A stretch of 64,000 bases of DNA, taken from Mizuhopecten yessoensis. Lineage: Eukaryota. Position 1 is the first letter of the stretch, and each line of letters starts with the position of its first letter. Positions 1,957 to 31,905 of the stretch are shown one piece after another. The notes under the pieces are model-generated. The model saw nothing but the letters and a program-made list of their open reading frames with translations. It was not told where the DNA came from and searched no databases. Where the stretch lies: positions 7,381,173-7,445,172 of the forward strand of contig NW_018404492.1 in NCBI RefSeq assembly GCF_002113885.1, in the 5' to 3' direction. Made by a program: the position numbers and the translations under genes.

Positions 1957-3217
1957 ATGAAATTATTGTCATTTTTAAAAGTTCAAAATATAATGGCTAA
2001 TTTTGATAATGTGAACTTGCATACAACTTAAGTAGTATCCACATTTAAGGGCCTTCGTTGCGCACTCAAGTTGAATTTGACTTACGATTCATAAAGAGAG
2101 ATACTAGGGGTCTCCCAAACATGAATACATCATAGCAAAAATAAGTATTTTAACTCTAATTGTACATGGGAGAAGTATAAATCACACGAGACAATACAGC
2201 TTTCACAAAATCAGTAACTCTAACTCATAATCGATGGAATTTTGACTATGAACCAAAGAAAGACTTGCAAAGAAACATCGAAAACAATATTCATACATTG
2301 TACCAATAACCAAATTTGCACTACTTTTTGATCTGCTAATAATTAAATTTCATGAAAGGTAACAAGCTTGTTAAAAAGATGTACAGAAGTTCTGGTTATT
2401 CCGTAGCTCCTGTATTGTATGTGAGTACCTACCAATTGCGATAGATGAGGTCTAGTATCGGAGCTTTCGAGCATTTATCCGTATAAAAACTACTTCATTA
2501 AACTTGTTTTCCATAAGGAAATTATATCTTATGTTTCACGTTATTTAGTCGAAACGGTTTGCTTAATATGTTCGAAACAAAATATATAATAGCATAAAGT
2601 ACTCGAATGATTTTGTGAATCAATAAATGTTTGAGTGTCGAATTTGTCTCAATTTTGCCCTCGTGCTTTGTAAAAGACACATGAACAATATGTTAACAAG
2701 GAATGCAGAGGTCACACGGTTTATTTGGTGTTGAACGTTTTGCTGTTTGTTTTGTATCAAATCGATAAAAGACGAGTTTACGAATTTATTGTTGTTATGA
2801 TGACAGCTTTGCTCCCCTGCATCAAGCGTCTTTGTCTGGCTAGTATTGTCTTTCTCAGAGATGCAGATTGACAAAGGAGATTACGATCATGACGTATACG
2901 GACCACCTGTCGTTGATGGTTTCCCTTGTCTGCCTTAGTTCTACAGTATACAGGTGATTTTAAAGAACTACGAAATCGATTCAGGTATAACAAAACGATG
3001 ATGGCCCTTGAGCCAAACACACATTACAACGGTGGATATAAGACACACTTGACCTCTGCACAAGCAGATAATGGTTTGAGCGACAAAACATCTTAAATCT
3101 TAAATAGTATAAAATAAGAACTTTCTCTCCATCACCAACATATGCAATTCGCTTCTAACGGCAAGAGATTACTTATTTTCGTCGTTTAACACTAATACTC
3201 TTTTTAAGGAAGCCGAA

Positions 3218-5733
3218 ATGCAAGGTGGGTGTTTTGCACTTGCCGTTTGTTTTGCCATTTTTCCTGACAACGAAGGTCATTACAGTGGTGACAAATATGA
3301 CCTGACTGATTACAATGGCCTCTTCTTTTCCAACGATGAAATAAAAGGGCTGAAGGAGGACATGGGGTCCCTGTTGTTAGCAACCATCAAGGATAAAGAC
3401 CGTTCCTTCCGCTTCACTCCTGGAAAATGGAAGAGAAGGCTACCCAAGAGCAGAAAGGAGAAGGTGGAAGAGGAATGTCCCGAACGATCAAAAAGGCGTA
3501 CGTGTCCGTCTTGTTGTCAAACGTAAGTACAGTTCATAGCACCATAAATTGATATGGACGGATTTTAAGGCTGCTAAATGCATGTGATAATCTTTTGTAC
3601 CAGTAAAACTGAAACGAAACAAATTAATTAATGATGAACGTAACATACATACAGAGGTGATTGCTCCTTTAAAATGTTGTTATAGATAGCAGTAAAAAGA
3701 CAAAGTTCAGCCATTTGGAAACGTGATATGAAAATAACCAGGATGCTTTGTAGCCTGACCTAATTAGCAAAACGCTTACTGGTATCGTTGTTTACTCCAC
3801 TATAACATACCAAAATCACCTTTACCGACGCAATGAAATCACGTCTTAAAAAATGTTCGTTCATTAGATAAATGTTTTACATGAACTCGTACAGATCTTA
3901 TCCAAAGTAGAAATATTTCAGTTCAATGGGTTTTTTTCTTTTCCCTTTGTATTTCTAGTGATTATTTTACGTAGCAAGGTGGTTGACTATCAGTTCCCGA
4001 GGTTGTCCGTGCCTTTGCTGAAATGTATTCTGTCTGGGTTTACACGATATACTAGTTAAAGTAAAAATATAGTACATGTAACGTTATAAAGAGTTTATAG
4101 GCACATTTTATTTATCACTGTATTTTACATGTTTCAGAATTTATTAGTTGCGGGGTTTTGTCATTCTTTGACCTTCAGTACCAGAGATATTCTTTAATTG
4201 ACGAAATGGCCTCATGTGTTCTTCGTTTGTCTTTCTGCATCTACAAACAGACTTTTCCAATAGGTCTTGCATGTCCTCCTATTTCTAGTATTTTTTGTTA
4301 TTTTCTCTTGTGCAGGGGAATATTTCAAAACATTTCTGTATTTCACAGACAATGGGTGGCAGACCGCGTATGGAAAGTGATGTACAACAACACTGAATAC
4401 AACGTTGTGCAAAAACATAACAAGTACCAGGTCATCTTCCAAGGCGTCTGTTCGTAAGTATACAGAAAACTGACGTTTAAGTGTGCCATTTTGACTAAAA
4501 CCTATTAGTTCGGCCTATTTGTGGTTTAACCTCTGACTTATGGCGACAGATTGCTATTCATTATAGACAATGAACGTGTAATATAACGTGTAAAATTCGG
4601 CCAAAATCCATCTTTATTGTATGTTGTACATTATCGCTGTGTCCAAGATATAAAAGTACAATAAAAGAACACACTTTTGTCCATAACCGATATAAATTCA
4701 GAGGATTCATTGGATTTGGATTTGTAAAAATATCGTTATCACCATCTGATGAATACGCACATGTACGTATATTGATGACAAATAACAAAAGACGGTTACA
4801 AATGAACTGGTATATGTGTATTTACAGAAGAAGTTTAGACGGCAACCTATATAAAATCTCCGTTTGTGAAGCAATAAAAATGTATTTTGTTGCAATCAGT
4901 TTGGAAAAAATAGCTGTTTTCATAATTTGAAGTGTCAATCTCTTGGAAATCATTTCATATTTAACTAGCTATACATACCGGGAGTGCCAGAATGTATTAT
5001 AAACATCACTTTTTGGAATGTTACTGCATTATTTTTTTAACTGCTTATCCATCGGAGTACTATTTATTGCCGTTTATTCTGGTGTTATGTTTTGCCAGAG
5101 ACGAACTGCAATATGTAACGTGTTTAGCATATTTTGTATATATATATACTAGTGAAATGCCCTTTCAGTGGCATCGGCAAAAACGGTACATTATTGAATA
5201 AGTTTTATATAAACATTTATCAAATGAACCTCATTGAAAGGGTATGGTCTCTCAGGGATAAATACGTTTACGGTGTAGGTTATTTGCCAGCAATAATTAT
5301 CGGAGACCGGTTCATTTCTTTTCATATCTATGTAACTGTTGTCCTACATGAATATAGACAACAATACTTTTGCAGTAGTACCTGGAAAATAACAAAACAT
5401 GCGAAAAAATTACTTTGGCAGAAAGTAATAACTTTAAATATTACTAAGTGGGATAGTTTTGTTTCAGGCATATCGGTTTATGATGGATGGTAAATGGCAG
5501 CTACAGTCTTTTATGAAACTATTATAGTACACCCATAAACATTCTTTTCTCTCTTGCACAGCTGCAGCAATTGTGGGCCTGTGATAACGTGTGGTGAAGA
5601 GGATTTGTTCTTCACGCCGATCTTGGTGGAAGACAGCGAACGTCCAAAGAACGATTCTCGCCCCGCCACCCACTTCCTTCCCCTGCGAATATCCCGCTTC
5701 TGTCAGTGTTCCAAAGGGTCGTGGATCGTGTAA
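3218..5733 (+). CDS. Secreted cystine-knot precursor, Spaetzle/neurotrophin-like, 193 aa; exons 3218-3522, 4349-4453, 5562-5733
   Basis: Both introns are phase 2 with GTAAGT donors and pyrimidine-rich CAG acceptors, and the frame is preserved. Hydrophobic N-terminus MQGGCFALAVCFAIFPDNEG, furin site RSKRR, then TCPSCCQTQWVADRVWKVMYNNTEYNVVQKHNKYQVIFQGVCSCSNCGPVITCGEEDLFFTPILVEDSERPKNDSRPATHFLPLRISRFCQCSKGSWIV with C-terminal CxC. The family call rests on cysteine spacing and the 'VVQ...Q.I...C' pattern. Confidence 0.8.
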
Positions 5734-5861
5734 ACGTCGATATCCTCAGAAAAGTTGATGTTGTAAGATTGTTTTCCTATAAGAACGAAATAATGTGAAA
5801 GTTGGTTTAAAGAACATTGTGTTTTGTTGTTTTGGGCACACCATTGTAGGATTTGTTGTAA

Positions 5862-6030
5862 GTACTAGATTTACTAAAATGACTAAACCTATTCTTCTTT
5901 CTCTTGTGCTGATCAATTGTACGAGACTTGATAAAATGACTAAACCTTTTCTTCTTCTCTTGTGCTGATTAATTGTACTAGATTTGTTAAGATGACTTAA
6001 CCTATTCTTCTTTCTCTCGTCCTGATCAAT
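5862..6030. repeat. ~56-bp tandem repeat x3 in the putative 3' UTR of the cystine-knot gene
   Basis: GTACTAGATTT...AAATGACTAAACCT(A/T)TTCTTCTT...CTTGTGCTGAT(C/T)AATT repeated three times; AATAAA follows at ~6090. Confidence 0.8.
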
Positions 6031-7821
6031 ACTCTGTAGTGGCATATTATTATGTAAAGTGTTCTTTGATAAAAAGCTTATTTTTCACTAATAAATAGTT
6101 ATTGAGTTCTTTTGGTTTCAACTACTTCGACTTTTTGAAATCCATATAGAACAGATGATATCATGTGTAATTATAGAATTTCGATACGTAAAAATAAGAA
6201 GAAAATATAAAGGTTTTTGTTTTTCTAAGTACATGTATGGCATGATATCATGTTGGTTTTACTTGTTGTGAAATCTTGAAAGTCTTCAGTTTTTCAGTCA
6301 CATTATTCATTATCATGGTGTTAGATGATAAGAACAATACCTGGTTGATGTGTGTCGTTGTGCGCTCAGCGTTTAGATTTATTCATTGAATTCAGTTTGT
6401 TAGTTTTTTCATGGTATTCTATTTTCTTAGTTATTTGTTCAGTCTATTGCGAGTCTGACAGAGTACCGTAAAATGTTTTGTTTTGGCAATAATAATATGC
6501 ATGTTTCTATTTTCTGAAGTATACAATCCTAACAACGTAAGATGACTTCTATAAAGTAAAAATATTTGGCATATCCGTAGTCAATACCAATAAAAATAAT
6601 AAGTTTACTGTCTAGCAAATTTTGAGAGGACATTTCATCTTCCCACTGATCCATATACAATTCGCGTTATTTCTATCGCATGTATAACTATAAACGTCCT
6701 ACGTTTTAAGTCAATGACTAGACTTGATAACATGCAAATTACTTAAAGATTTGATTTTTTTAAGAAATATGAAACTATACGAATGTTTTATTTGAAAACA
6801 TTATATAAAAAGCTATTTACCTTCATTTTAGGTAGATAAAAGCACCATCTCAAAAATCGTAAATGCTAGCACATCTTATCGCGAATTTTGTAGCCGTTCC
6901 TATATCGTCTTATCGTCAAAATACAGTAAAGAGACCTTTAGTTCCGTCCGCATACATGTACCTTATCGATCAAAGCATAATCTCGGTTGATGATTTTGAA
7001 AACTGAATTATACACGTAATTTATTTTGTTAGTGTTTTCACTAACAGATTTCATAATAACAACAAAGGCATTGTAAAACGTAAAATACAAATATTCATTT
7101 CATTGCTGTTATGTTCATCATTCATTCAGTATTTGGCATGGTAATTCAACTACTGTTTATTTTTCAACACATTCATTTAACATTCAAGTTCATATAGAAC
7201 CAAGACAATTTGGTTCACACAAATTACATATTGCAATGGAAGCATTGAGCACAAGTGAACCTTGATTAGAAATGCACACAAATTTAAATGTACGCAATAT
7301 GTATTTTAGTCCTAATACTTGGATCACAATTATATAAACATTTTCTCCGGATTATTATCTGTCCCAGCTTAATGAAACACAACTGTAACTGACTTCAGCC
7401 TAACTTACGGTCAAGTTGTACATGCATCCAACAAACAATAGATTTTATGAAATTTCCGATTCCACAAATTCCACTGTAATGGACTTATCTTACTGTTGTT
7501 TATGTACGAAAATCATATATTTTTGGCAGTAAATTAGTATGCATGTTCATATGTCGGCAGACATTGCAATCGTACATACACTTAGTAAACAAATTTCATT
7601 CGTATTAAGTAATTAAAAGCTTAGCACAAAATCTTAATAATTAAACGTAGACACTCTCTGGCAGCCTATTGCCTATTGACGACGAGTAAACGCTAATCAG
7701 CTTGAACACACTGTTTTGAATAGCAAAACCAGAATAACGTCGCTGTCAATGTGATGACATGGCACTCTCCAGATGATTTTTATGTTCGTGGCAGATGATC
7801 AGTTTGGTTTGGGTATGTCGG

Positions 7822-23805: not shown

Positions 23806-31905
<8,100 letters not shown>

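What the first reader, a model, noticed from the sequence alone, without database searches (positions are those of the whole stretch)
3218..5733. Hidden 3-exon Spaetzle/neurotrophin-like cystine-knot ligand precursor
Seen: exons 3218-3522, 4349-4453 and 5562-5733 join through two phase-2 GT-AG introns into a 193-aa protein. It has a signal-like N-terminus, a pro-region, an RSKRR furin site and a ~99-aa mature domain with 9 Cys ending in CxC. The third exon is invisible in the ORF track. Established: Spaetzle (the insect Toll ligand) and neurotrophins are prodomain + cystine-knot proteins activated by cleavage, and an odd Cys count permits a disulfide dimer. Inference: this is a divergent molluscan Spaetzle-like cytokine or growth factor processed by furin rather than by a serine-protease cascade, and so a candidate ligand for bivalve Toll-like or Trk-like receptors. 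It is the best candidate here for a poorly described signalling system.
Basis: partly seen in the sequence, partly recalled or inferred. Interest (0 to 1): 0.78.

Follow-up and report, generated by a model that had tools for sequence, protein, structure and literature searches.

The report
Scallop-only secreted cystine-knot-like cytokine gene
The three-exon gene is real, transcribed and already listed in public databases as an uncharacterised Yesso scallop protein; it encodes a small secreted cysteine-rich protein found only in scallops. That protein probably belongs to the cystine-knot cytokine group and looks at least as much like interleukin-17 as like Spaetzle or neurotrophin, but no test here proves either.

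Summary
OBSERVATION: confirmed. One 979-nt transcript contig skips exactly 3523-4348 and 4454-5561, both GT..AG. The three exon translations are 100% identical to a 193-aa database protein, P0007. P0007 is LOC110445556 of Mizuhopecten yessoensis, "uncharacterized", so the gene is annotated, not hidden.

RELATIVES: only four scallop orthologues (78-100% identical) and one exon-1 fragment turned up. The gene is single copy in its own genome.

INTERPRETATION: partly supported.
- Pfam gives no hit at E<=10, so not Spaetzle, NGF or IL17. PDB sequence searches give nothing relevant.
- Both AlphaFold models are unusable (pLDDT 34 and 40), so the fold is untested.
- Language-model features place the C-terminal domain among IL17 (0.92), Spaetzle/IL17 (0.91) and NGF/Spaetzle (0.90) clusters.
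- A profile of the scallop's own IL-17 paralogues aligns weakly but in order (P 0.001-0.003). The scallop's neurotrophin plus Spaetzle gives P 0.3.
- It shares the CPS motif and the C-x4-C...C-x-C spacing of IL-17.
- The genome also holds canonical Spaetzle and neurotrophin genes elsewhere.

VERDICT: a divergent, lineage-restricted cystine-knot-like cytokine, family unresolved, function unknown. Interest is moderate.

The parts
3108..3114 (+). TATAAAA, a candidate TATA box
   Evidence: It starts 27 nt before the 5' end (3135) of the spliced transcript contig. A contig end is not a mapped transcription start, so this is inference.
3135..3217 (+). 5' UTR (minimum extent), with a 15-codon upstream ORF at 3142-3189
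   Evidence: Transcript contig X1; uORF MQFASNGKRLLIFVV; in-frame stop at 3206-3208 before the ATG.
3218..3522 (+). Exon 1 coding part, residues 1-102 (last codon split). Signal-like 1-15 (3218-3262); conserved N-region 16-69 (3263-3424); variable basic linker 70-86 (3425-3475); invariant C87 (3476-3478); RSKRR 90-94 (3485-3499); TCPSCC 95-100.
   Evidence: Identity to orthologues by region: 40-73% signal, 72-80% N-region, 18-41% linker.
3523..4348 (+). Intron 1 (826 nt, phase 2, GTAAGT...CAG)
   Evidence: Joint 3522|4349 in the X1 contig; splice-site sequence. The same 'ac|gtaagt' donor occurs in the distant relative L008.
4349..4453 (+). Exon 2, residues 102(3rd base)-137(first two bases): QWVADRVWKVMYNNTEYNVVQKHNKYQVIFQGVC
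   Evidence: 100% to P0007 103-136.
4454..5561 (+). Intron 2 (1108 nt, phase 2, GTAAGT...CAG)
   Evidence: Joint 4453|5562 in the X1 contig.
5562..5733 (+). Exon 3 coding part, residues 137(3rd base)-193 plus TAA. It holds C138, C141, C147, C184 and C186.
   Evidence: 100% to P0007 138-193.
5734..6047 (+). 3' UTR (minimum extent)
   Evidence: The X1 contig runs to 6047.
6090..6095 (+). AATAAA, a candidate polyadenylation signal
   Evidence: It is the first AATAAA after the stop codon, 43 nt beyond the end of the contig. Inference.

Best explanation
WHAT IT IS. This is the single-copy, transcribed gene LOC110445556 of the Yesso scallop. It encodes a 193-aa secreted protein that is so far seen only in scallops (Pectinidae).

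PROPOSED FOLD AND MECHANISM (inferred). The C-terminal cysteine-rich domain (about residues 87-193) is most likely a highly divergent cystine-knot cytokine, closest to invertebrate interleukin-17.
- Knot disulfides proposed by analogy: C96-C147, C136-C184 and C141-C186.
- C87, C99, C100 and C138 would be extra cysteines.
- I expect it to leave the cell through the secretory pathway, probably to dimerise as these cytokines do, and to act as an extracellular ligand. An IL-17-receptor-like (SEFIR) receptor is the first candidate.
- The invariant RSKRR(90-94) fits the furin consensus and may be cut. It also overlaps the IL-17 'R-S-x-C-P-W' motif and lies between two conserved Cys, so cutting could leave a disulfide-linked two-chain form rather than release a pro-domain.

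SHOWN: gene structure, splicing, conservation and restriction to scallops. INFERRED: fold, disulfides, processing, dimer and receptor.
For: GENE AND TRANSCRIPT. A spliced contig carries both joints, and the exons match P0007 at 100%.

CONSERVATION. The C-domain is 83-86% identical among four scallop species, against 18-41% in the linker. The intron-1 position is kept in a relative only 57% identical overall (60% over the matched stretch).

SUPERFAMILY. For residues 85-193, the best ESM Atlas feature clusters are IL17 (0.92, 199 of 256 features, 8 of 30 hits), Spaetzle/IL17 (0.91), NGF/Spaetzle (0.90) and Noggin (0.85). All ten best named hits fall in one clan.

IL-17 PROFILE COMPARISON.
- hhalign of the family alignment A2 against a profile of the scallop's own IL17-domain paralogues gives score 22.7, P 0.00098 and 77 columns in order. 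It pairs C96, C136, C138, C141, C184 and C186 with the IL-17 Cys.
- Only 1 of 150 full column shuffles and 4 of 150 Cys-fixed shuffles reach that score. Reversed controls score 13.
- The tool's own hhalign gives P 0.0031.
- The best single comparator is L019 at 22.7. The scallop neurotrophin scores 12.1 and the scallop Spaetzle 12.9. Cross-family controls score 12-15.

SHARED MOTIFS.
- 'R-x-T-C-P-S' against 'R-S-T-C-P-W/S'.
- 'Q-G-V-C-S-C-S-N-C' against 'Q-A-E-C-R-C-S-N-C' in L019.
- An upstream 'C-P' Cys, as in L012, L017 and L018.
- A terminal C-x-C.

LITERATURE (PMC8353272). Invertebrate IL-17s are 126-221 aa with a C-terminal domain, 6-8 Cys, a CPW/SPW motif with a variable third residue, and 1-7 exons.
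Against: - Pfam IL17 (and every other Pfam model) gives no hit even at E<=10. The IL17 model run over the genome finds 40 loci above cut-off but not this one.
- hmmsearch with the scallop IL-17 profile scores about 0 bits after bias correction.
- Pairwise BLASTP gives nothing beyond a 23-residue patch.
- hhalign probability is only 10-22%. The neurotrophin and Spaetzle comparators were 1-2 sequences against 14-15 for IL-17, so the contrast is not fair.
- Two invariant positions of scallop IL-17s (the P of 'R-x-P' and a loop Tyr) and one IL-17 Cys are absent.
- About 15 extra residues follow CPS.
- The domain is split by two introns, whereas the scallop IL17 domains are single-exon.
- Feature scores of 0.9 or more occur for 4-10% of shuffled proteins.
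- No usable structure model exists.
Confidence: 0.45

Rival explanations
1. One reading: a Spaetzle/neurotrophin-type pro-protein. A chaperone-like pro-domain (residues 16-94) is removed by a furin-type convertase at RSKRR. This releases a 99-aa cystine-knot domain that dimerises through its odd cysteine and binds a Toll-like, Trk or p75-like receptor.
For: - The polybasic site is invariant and lies immediately before the first knot Cys.
- The N-region 16-69 is itself well conserved (72-80%), as a functional pro-domain would be.
- Its best feature clusters are NGF/NTF3_N/Spaetzle precursors, but only at 0.79-0.80.
- The C-domain clusters at 0.90-0.91 include Spaetzle and NGF.
- The distance from the first Cys cluster to C136 (35-39 residues) resembles what I recall for NGF and Spaetzle rather than IL-17 (about 22). 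A 'C...WV.D' motif recalls neurotrophins, e.g. the scallop neurotrophin 'CTSMSDWV'.
Against: - No Pfam Spaetzle or NGF hit at E<=10, and the locus is not hit by either model in the genome scan.
- hhalign against scallop neurotrophin plus Spaetzle gives P 0.3, and against each alone P 0.16-0.24.
- The II-III Cys spacing is x4 as in IL-17, not the x9 (NGF) or x6 (Spaetzle) I recall.
- Scores near 0.8 arise for a third of shuffled proteins.
- The invariant C87 upstream of the site argues that the domain starts before RSKRR.
- The genome already has canonical Spaetzle and neurotrophin genes.
Confidence: 0.22
2. A lineage-specific secreted cysteine-rich protein of another fold and role. Examples are a prohormone cut at its basic sites into an N-terminal peptide and a Cys-rich C-terminal peptide, or an extracellular matrix or defence protein. 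Its resemblance to cytokines would be only a matter of cysteine spacing and beta-rich composition.
For: - No significant sequence match to any family.
- Relatives are known only in scallops.
- There are several basic clusters (residues 72-82 and 90-94), and two separately conserved blocks lie either side of a variable linker.
- Cys-fixed shuffles recover part of the hhalign score (mean 14.9 against 11.5 for full shuffles).
Against: - All ten best named feature clusters fall in the cystine-knot cytokine clan, with 199 shared features.
- The hhalign alignment to IL-17 is in order and beats 146 of 150 Cys-fixed shuffles.
- The low-confidence models predict an all-beta C-domain with long paired strands.
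Confidence: 0.3
3. Not a functional gene: a chance ORF chain, or a transcribed pseudogene.
For: Low read support in the one raw poly-A library examined: 2 reads in about a quarter of run X22.
Against: - Exact canonical splicing in a transcript contig.
- An intact frame of 193-196 aa in four species, with 83-86% identity in the C-domain and all ten Cys invariant.
Confidence: 0.03

Closest known systems
Invertebrate interleukin-17 (Pfam IL17, PF06083), e.g. the scallop's own paralogue at G000:C4827 (L019:292-543:+, IL17 48.9 bits)
   Same: - Secreted protein of about 190 aa with a C-terminal Cys-rich domain.
- 'C-P-S' start motif preceded by Arg.
- 'Q-(A/G)-x-C-x-C-S-N-C', giving C-x4-C.
- A Cys just before the third strand, a terminal C-x-C, and an upstream 'C-P' Cys.
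- Weak but in-order profile-profile alignment.
   Different: - Fails the Pfam IL17 model.
- Lacks the invariant 'R-x-P' proline, a loop Tyr and one IL-17 Cys.
- Has about 15 extra residues with two extra Cys after CPS.
- Has a polybasic RSKRR and a well-conserved N-terminal region.
- The domain is split by two phase-2 introns.
- It is not in an IL-17 tandem cluster.
Spaetzle (PF16077) and neurotrophins (PF00243), e.g. the scallop genes at G000:C4063 (L003:511-864:-) and G000:C1786 (L004:532-945:-)
   Same: - Signal peptide, then a conserved N-terminal region, then a polybasic site directly before a roughly 100-aa Cys-rich beta domain ending in C-x-C.
- Similar length between the first and second knot Cys.
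- Language-model neighbours at 0.90-0.91.
   Different: - No Pfam hit.
- hhalign P 0.16-0.3.
- C-x4-C instead of the wider II-III spacing.
- 9-10 Cys rather than 6-7.
- First Cys only two residues after the basic site.
- The scallop already has bona fide members of both families.
PTTH / Trunk / Noggin-like cystine-knot ligands
   Same: - From my own knowledge: a precursor with basic cleavage sites and a mature chain of about 100 aa with an odd Cys count forming a disulfide dimer.
- A Noggin cluster appears at 0.85.
   Different: No sequence or profile evidence here. From memory, the distance from Cys I to Cys II is shorter in PTTH. Not tested further.

Membership tests
Spaetzle (PF16077) | Match to the family profile above the gathering score (27 bits) | tested here: not met
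   No Pfam family at E<=10 for P0007, P0001, P0005 or P0006. The genome scan with PF16077 hits C4063 (36.6 bits) but not this locus. The positive control L003 scores 36.8 bits.
Spaetzle (PF16077) | Cystine-knot fold with three knot disulfides plus an inter-chain Cys | tested here: inconclusive
   AlphaFold2 pLDDT is 34.2 (full length) and 39.7 (residues 84-193). Fold searches on the latter return noise.
Spaetzle (PF16077) | Activation by proteolytic removal of a pro-domain, and binding to a Toll receptor | not testable with these tools
   Only the conserved RSKRR motif is visible.
Neurotrophin / NGF (PF00243) | Match to the family profile above the gathering score (27 bits) | tested here: not met
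   No hit at E<=10. The genome scan finds C1786 (76.3 bits) and C4373 but not this locus. hhalign A2 against scallop neurotrophin plus Spaetzle gives P 0.3.
Neurotrophin / NGF (PF00243) | Six knot Cys with the family's spacing | tested here: inconclusive
   The I-II distance and the terminal C-x-C fit. The II-III spacing is x4 here against x6 in the scallop neurotrophin (C-VDAGAP-C). Nine Cys are present instead of six.
Interleukin-17 (PF06083) | Match to the family profile above the gathering score (24 bits) | tested here: not met
   No hit at E<=10. The genome scan lists 40 loci above cut-off, none at this locus. A scallop-specific IL-17 HMM gives about 0 bits.
Interleukin-17 (PF06083) | CPW/SPW motif at the start of the domain (PMC8353272) | tested here: met
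   C96-P97-S98. The same CPS variant occurs in the scallop IL-17 paralogues L006, L018 and L019.
Interleukin-17 (PF06083) | Four-Cys motif C-x4-C ... C-x-C, plus the two extra invertebrate Cys | tested here: met
   C136-x4-C141 and C184-x-C186. C96 and C147 sit at the positions of the extra invertebrate pair in the hhalign alignment, with C147 one column off.
Interleukin-17 (PF06083) | Other invariant positions of the scallop paralogues (P of 'R-x-P', loop Tyr) | tested here: not met
   The A3 invariants P19 and Y68 have no counterpart.
Interleukin-17 (PF06083) | Significant profile-profile similarity | tested here: inconclusive
   hhalign P 0.00098 (probability 22%) and P 0.0031 (probability 10%). 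1 of 150 full shuffles and 4 of 150 Cys-fixed shuffles reach the score.
Cystine-knot cytokine superfamily (clan level) | Consistent similarity to several member families | tested here: inconclusive
   ESM Atlas features score 0.92 / 0.91 / 0.90 for IL17, Spaetzle and NGF clusters, and all ten best named hits lie in one clan. The tool's own calibration says such scores also occur by chance in 4-10% of shuffled proteins.

The most novel reading that the evidence does not exclude
The protein founds a new scallop-born family of cystine-knot cytokines. It would combine an IL-17-type knot (CPS, C-x4-C...C-x-C) with a neurotrophin/Spaetzle-type conserved pro-region and a furin switch, giving a convertase-activated IL-17-like ligand. 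That mode of regulation is not described, to my knowledge, for IL-17 cytokines. It would act on one of the expanded bivalve IL-17R or TLR receptors.
Probability: 0.15. Interest if true: 0.65.

Novelty: new variant of a known kind. Interest (0 to 1): 0.4.

Why it matters
- Bivalves have very large TLR and IL-17 repertoires, and almost no receptor has a known endogenous ligand. A conserved, secreted cytokine-like protein that domain scans miss shows that catalogues built on Pfam domains undercount such ligands. One example is the count of 31 IL-17 genes for this species in PMC8353272.
- If the RSKRR site is used, this would be a protease-gated IL-17-like signal, which would link two branches of the cystine-knot cytokines.
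- As it stands, the gene is one uncharacterised, lineage-restricted gene with no functional data. For the Toll-ligand question, the canonical Spaetzle-domain and neurotrophin genes found elsewhere in the same genome are better candidates.

Tried and rejected
1. Pfam exon by exon and on the full-length database proteins: nothing. The one Baculo_VP39 hit at E 0.058 in a single orthologue is noise.
2. PDB sequence searches with exon 3, P0001 and the profile A2: nothing, or a chance 23-residue match to ribosomal protein L32.
3. Word-index protein search with exon 1: blank, because the length window excluded 193-aa proteins.
4. Exhaustive phmmer with exon 1: only scallop relatives. P0003 and P0004 are low-complexity chance hits.
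5. Word search on residues 84-193: the same four scallop proteins.
6. tblastn of the exons against the window, and exon and profile searches of the own genome: no paralogue and no tandem cluster.
7. AlphaFold2 twice: pLDDT below 40. Foldseek against the PDB and VIA-align wide returned metallo-beta-lactamases and the like at E>0.4 or Z<=2.3. I treat these as meaningless, not as evidence against a knot.
8. hmmsearch of A2 against the scallop neurotrophin, Spaetzle and IL-17s, and of a scallop IL-17 HMM against the family: about 0 bits.
9. Pairwise BLASTP: nothing significant.
10. The bacterial promoter/terminator scan does not apply to an animal gene.
11. Literature searches by locus and accession numbers: no paper.
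12. Earlier findings of the scan: nothing relevant.
Full report
WHAT IS IN THE SEQUENCE

- Exon 1 CDS is 3218-3522: ATG after an in-frame TAA at 3206, 305 nt.
- Exon 2 is 4349-4453 (105 nt).
- Exon 3 CDS is 5562-5733 (TAA at 5731-5733).

Both introns begin GTAAGT and end in a pyrimidine tract plus CAG, and both split a codon after its second base, so they are phase 2.

Laying public runs on window:2600-6600 gave one 979-nt contig in run X1. It covers 3135-3522, 4349-4453 and 5562-6047, with GT..AG joints exactly at 3522|4349 and 4453|5562. X1 is only guessed to be RNA. However, the own genome (987.6 Mb) holds no second, intron-less copy of any exon, so a contig lacking both introns must come from spliced RNA.

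A TATAAAA at 3108-3114 lies 27 nt before the contig's 5' end. An AATAAA at 6090-6095 lies 43 nt after its 3' end. Both are suggestive only.

HOW THE FULL-LENGTH PROTEIN WAS HANDLED

The exhaustive phmmer search with exon 1 returned a 193-aa protein, P0001. The word-index search with P0001 then returned P0007. P0007 is 100% identical to the three exon translations: residues 1-102, 103-136 and 138-193, with S137 the split codon. All full-length analyses used these database proteins.

P0007 is OWF54128.1 / XP_021345896.1 / XP_021345897.1 / A0A210QZC9, [quoted passage not shown], on a 7.50-Mb scaffold. The gene is therefore not hidden: GenBank and RefSeq carry exactly this model. No paper in the library cites it.

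DISTRIBUTION

Only four full-length relatives exist in 5.8 billion clustered proteins: Pecten maximus, Ylistrum balloti, Argopecten irradians and M. yessoensis. They are 78-100% identical to the Pecten maximus query P0001.

There is also one exon-1-only fragment, P0002, which is 57% identical to P0007 (60% to the exon-1 query over the matched stretch). It comes from a 1291-nt Logan contig and ends at the same 'ac|gtaagt' donor.

There is no paralogue in the window or in the genome.

ANATOMY OF THE PROTEIN
- Residues 1-15 are hydrophobic and signal-like. The sequence varies between species but stays hydrophobic.
- Residues 16-69 are well conserved (72-80%), including in P0002.
- Residues 70-86 form a variable basic linker (18-41%).
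- C87 is invariant.
- Residues 89-94 read ERSKRR in the four full-length orthologues and ERTKKR in P0002.
- Residues 95-193 are 82-85% identical and carry nine invariant Cys: 96, 99, 100, 136, 138, 141, 147, 184 and 186.

With C87 the conserved non-signal Cys number ten.

The X1 allele differs from the reference at 10 coding positions in 9 codons. Five of those codons change the residue, and four of the five lie in the N-region or linker.

FAMILY TESTS

Sequence profiles.
- No Pfam model hits any member even at E<=10. PDB sequence searches are blank or noise.
- The Pfam Spaetzle, IL17 and NGF models, run over the whole genome, find one Spaetzle-domain ORF (36.6 bits), 40 IL17 loci above cut-off and one clear neurotrophin (76.3 bits). 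None of them touches this locus. The domain here is split over three exons, which handicaps that particular scan.

Fold.
- AlphaFold2 with the shallow family alignment gave pLDDT 34.2 (full length) and 39.7 (residues 84-193).
- Foldseek and VIA-align on the latter gave only noise.
Both models do draw the C-domain as long beta strands.

Language-model features.
- For residues 85-193 the nearest ESM Atlas clusters are IL17 (0.92, 199 of 256 features, 8 of 30 hits), a Spaetzle/IL17 mix (0.91), NGF/Spaetzle (0.90) and Noggin (0.85). All ten best named hits lie in one clan.
- For the N-region 16-86 the nearest are NGF/NTF3_N/Spaetzle precursors, but only at 0.79-0.80, a level a third of shuffled proteins reach.

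IL-17 AGAINST SPAETZLE/NEUROTROPHIN

I fetched the scallop's own canonical genes as comparators and confirmed them by Pfam: L019 IL17 48.9 bits; L004 NGF 76.3 bits; L003 Spaetzle 36.8 plus NGF 27.8 bits.

HMMER and BLASTP see nothing.

Profile-profile comparison gives a weak signal for IL-17.
- hhalign of the family alignment A2 against a profile of 15 scallop IL-17 domains gives a 77-column alignment in order: score 22.7, P 0.00098, probability 22%.
- It matches C96, C136, C138, C141, C184 and C186 to IL-17 Cys, with C147 one column off.
- 1 of 150 full column shuffles and 4 of 150 Cys-fixed shuffles reach the score. Reversed controls score 13.
- The tool's own hhalign against 14 of these sequences gives P 0.0031, probability 10%.
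- Against the scallop neurotrophin, Spaetzle, or both aligned, P is 0.16-0.3.
- Known cross-family pairs score 12-15.

The contrast is unfair in depth: 14-15 sequences against 1-2.

Motifs visible.
- 'K-R-R-T-C-P-S' here against 'x-R-S-T-C-P-W/S' in IL-17s.
- 'Q-G-V-C-S-C-S-N-C' here against 'Q-A-E-C-R-C-S-N-C' in L019. This gives the IL-17 C-x4-C spacing.
- An upstream 'C-P' Cys, as in L012, L017 and L018 (our C87).
- A terminal C-x-C.

Features missing here: the invariant Pro of 'R-x-P', a loop Tyr and one IL-17 Cys. Features extra here: about 15 residues with two Cys after CPS, and two introns inside the domain.

The general description of invertebrate IL-17s in PMC8353272 fits: 126-221 aa, C-terminal domain, 6-8 Cys, CPW/SPW with a variable third residue, 1-7 exons. 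That survey, which relies on the IL17 domain, counted 31 genes in this species and would not have seen this one.

READING

Shown:
- a real, spliced, conserved, single-copy gene restricted to scallops;
- a product with a signal-like start, two conserved blocks, an invariant polybasic site and ten invariant Cys.

Inferred:
- a cystine-knot cytokine fold (my odds about 0.7-0.75);
- within that, IL-17-like rather than Spaetzle/neurotrophin-like (about 0.45 against 0.22 overall);
- secretion, dimerisation and receptor binding.

RSKRR fits the furin consensus. It also overlaps the IL-17 'R-S-x-C-P-W' motif and sits between C87 and C96. Whether it marks a pro-domain boundary, produces a two-chain disulfide-linked form, or is not cut at all remains open.

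The claim that this is the best candidate Toll or Trk ligand is weakened by the canonical Spaetzle-domain and neurotrophin genes elsewhere in the genome.

VERDICT

The gene is a divergent variant within a known kind (cystine-knot cytokines). Its family is unresolved, its function is unknown, and it is already annotated as uncharacterised. Interest is moderate.

Noticed in passing
G000:C4063:3486443-3486724 (-), = L003:511-864:-: A single-exon ORF with a canonical Spaetzle domain (Pfam Spaetzle 36.8 bits, also NGF 27.8 bits) lies elsewhere in the scallop genome. A 2020 paper (PMC7773633) states that spaetzle homologues are undescribed outside arthropods except in the clam Paphia undulata.
   Followed up: partly
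G000:C1786:434882-435187 (-), = L004:532-945:-: A canonical neurotrophin gene (Pfam NGF 76.3 bits) in a 288-codon open frame, with RKRRRR before the knot domain. A second, partial NGF-like hit lies at G000:C4373:1823269-1823391 (26.9 bits).
   Followed up: partly
G000 contigs C4753, C1230, C4651, C4652, C76545, C5064 and others: Forty IL17-domain loci score above the Pfam cut-off, mostly in tandem clusters and each with the domain in one exon. The published count for this species is 31 genes (PMC8353272).
   Followed up: partly
window 3142-3189: A 15-codon upstream ORF (MQFASNGKRLLIFVV) lies in the 5' UTR of the gene, inside the transcript contig.
   Followed up: no
window 5386-5648 and 4809-5110: Contigs of runs X2 and X4 lie inside intron 2, and the X2 contig runs unspliced across the intron 2 / exon 3 border. 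They are unspliced precursor RNA or genomic DNA carried over in those libraries.
   Followed up: no
window 3304-3443, 5606, 5688, 5876: The X1 transcript allele differs from the reference at 11 of 979 positions, 8 of them in exon 1. Five of the nine affected codons change the residue, and four of those five lie in the N-region or linker. This is high allelic diversity, as is usual in bivalves.
   Followed up: partly
L008 (Logan contig of SRR27895283), 662-1042: An exon-1-only relative (P0002), 57% identical to P0007 (60% to the exon-1 query over the matched stretch), from an unnamed sample. It has a classical signal peptide after an over-extended start and the same phase-2 'ac|gtaagt' donor. 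The family therefore reaches beyond the four named scallops.
   Followed up: partly
window 25136-25925: A run of 790 N (assembly gap). The long 'ORFs' at 25061-26026 on both strands are artefacts of it.
   Followed up: no
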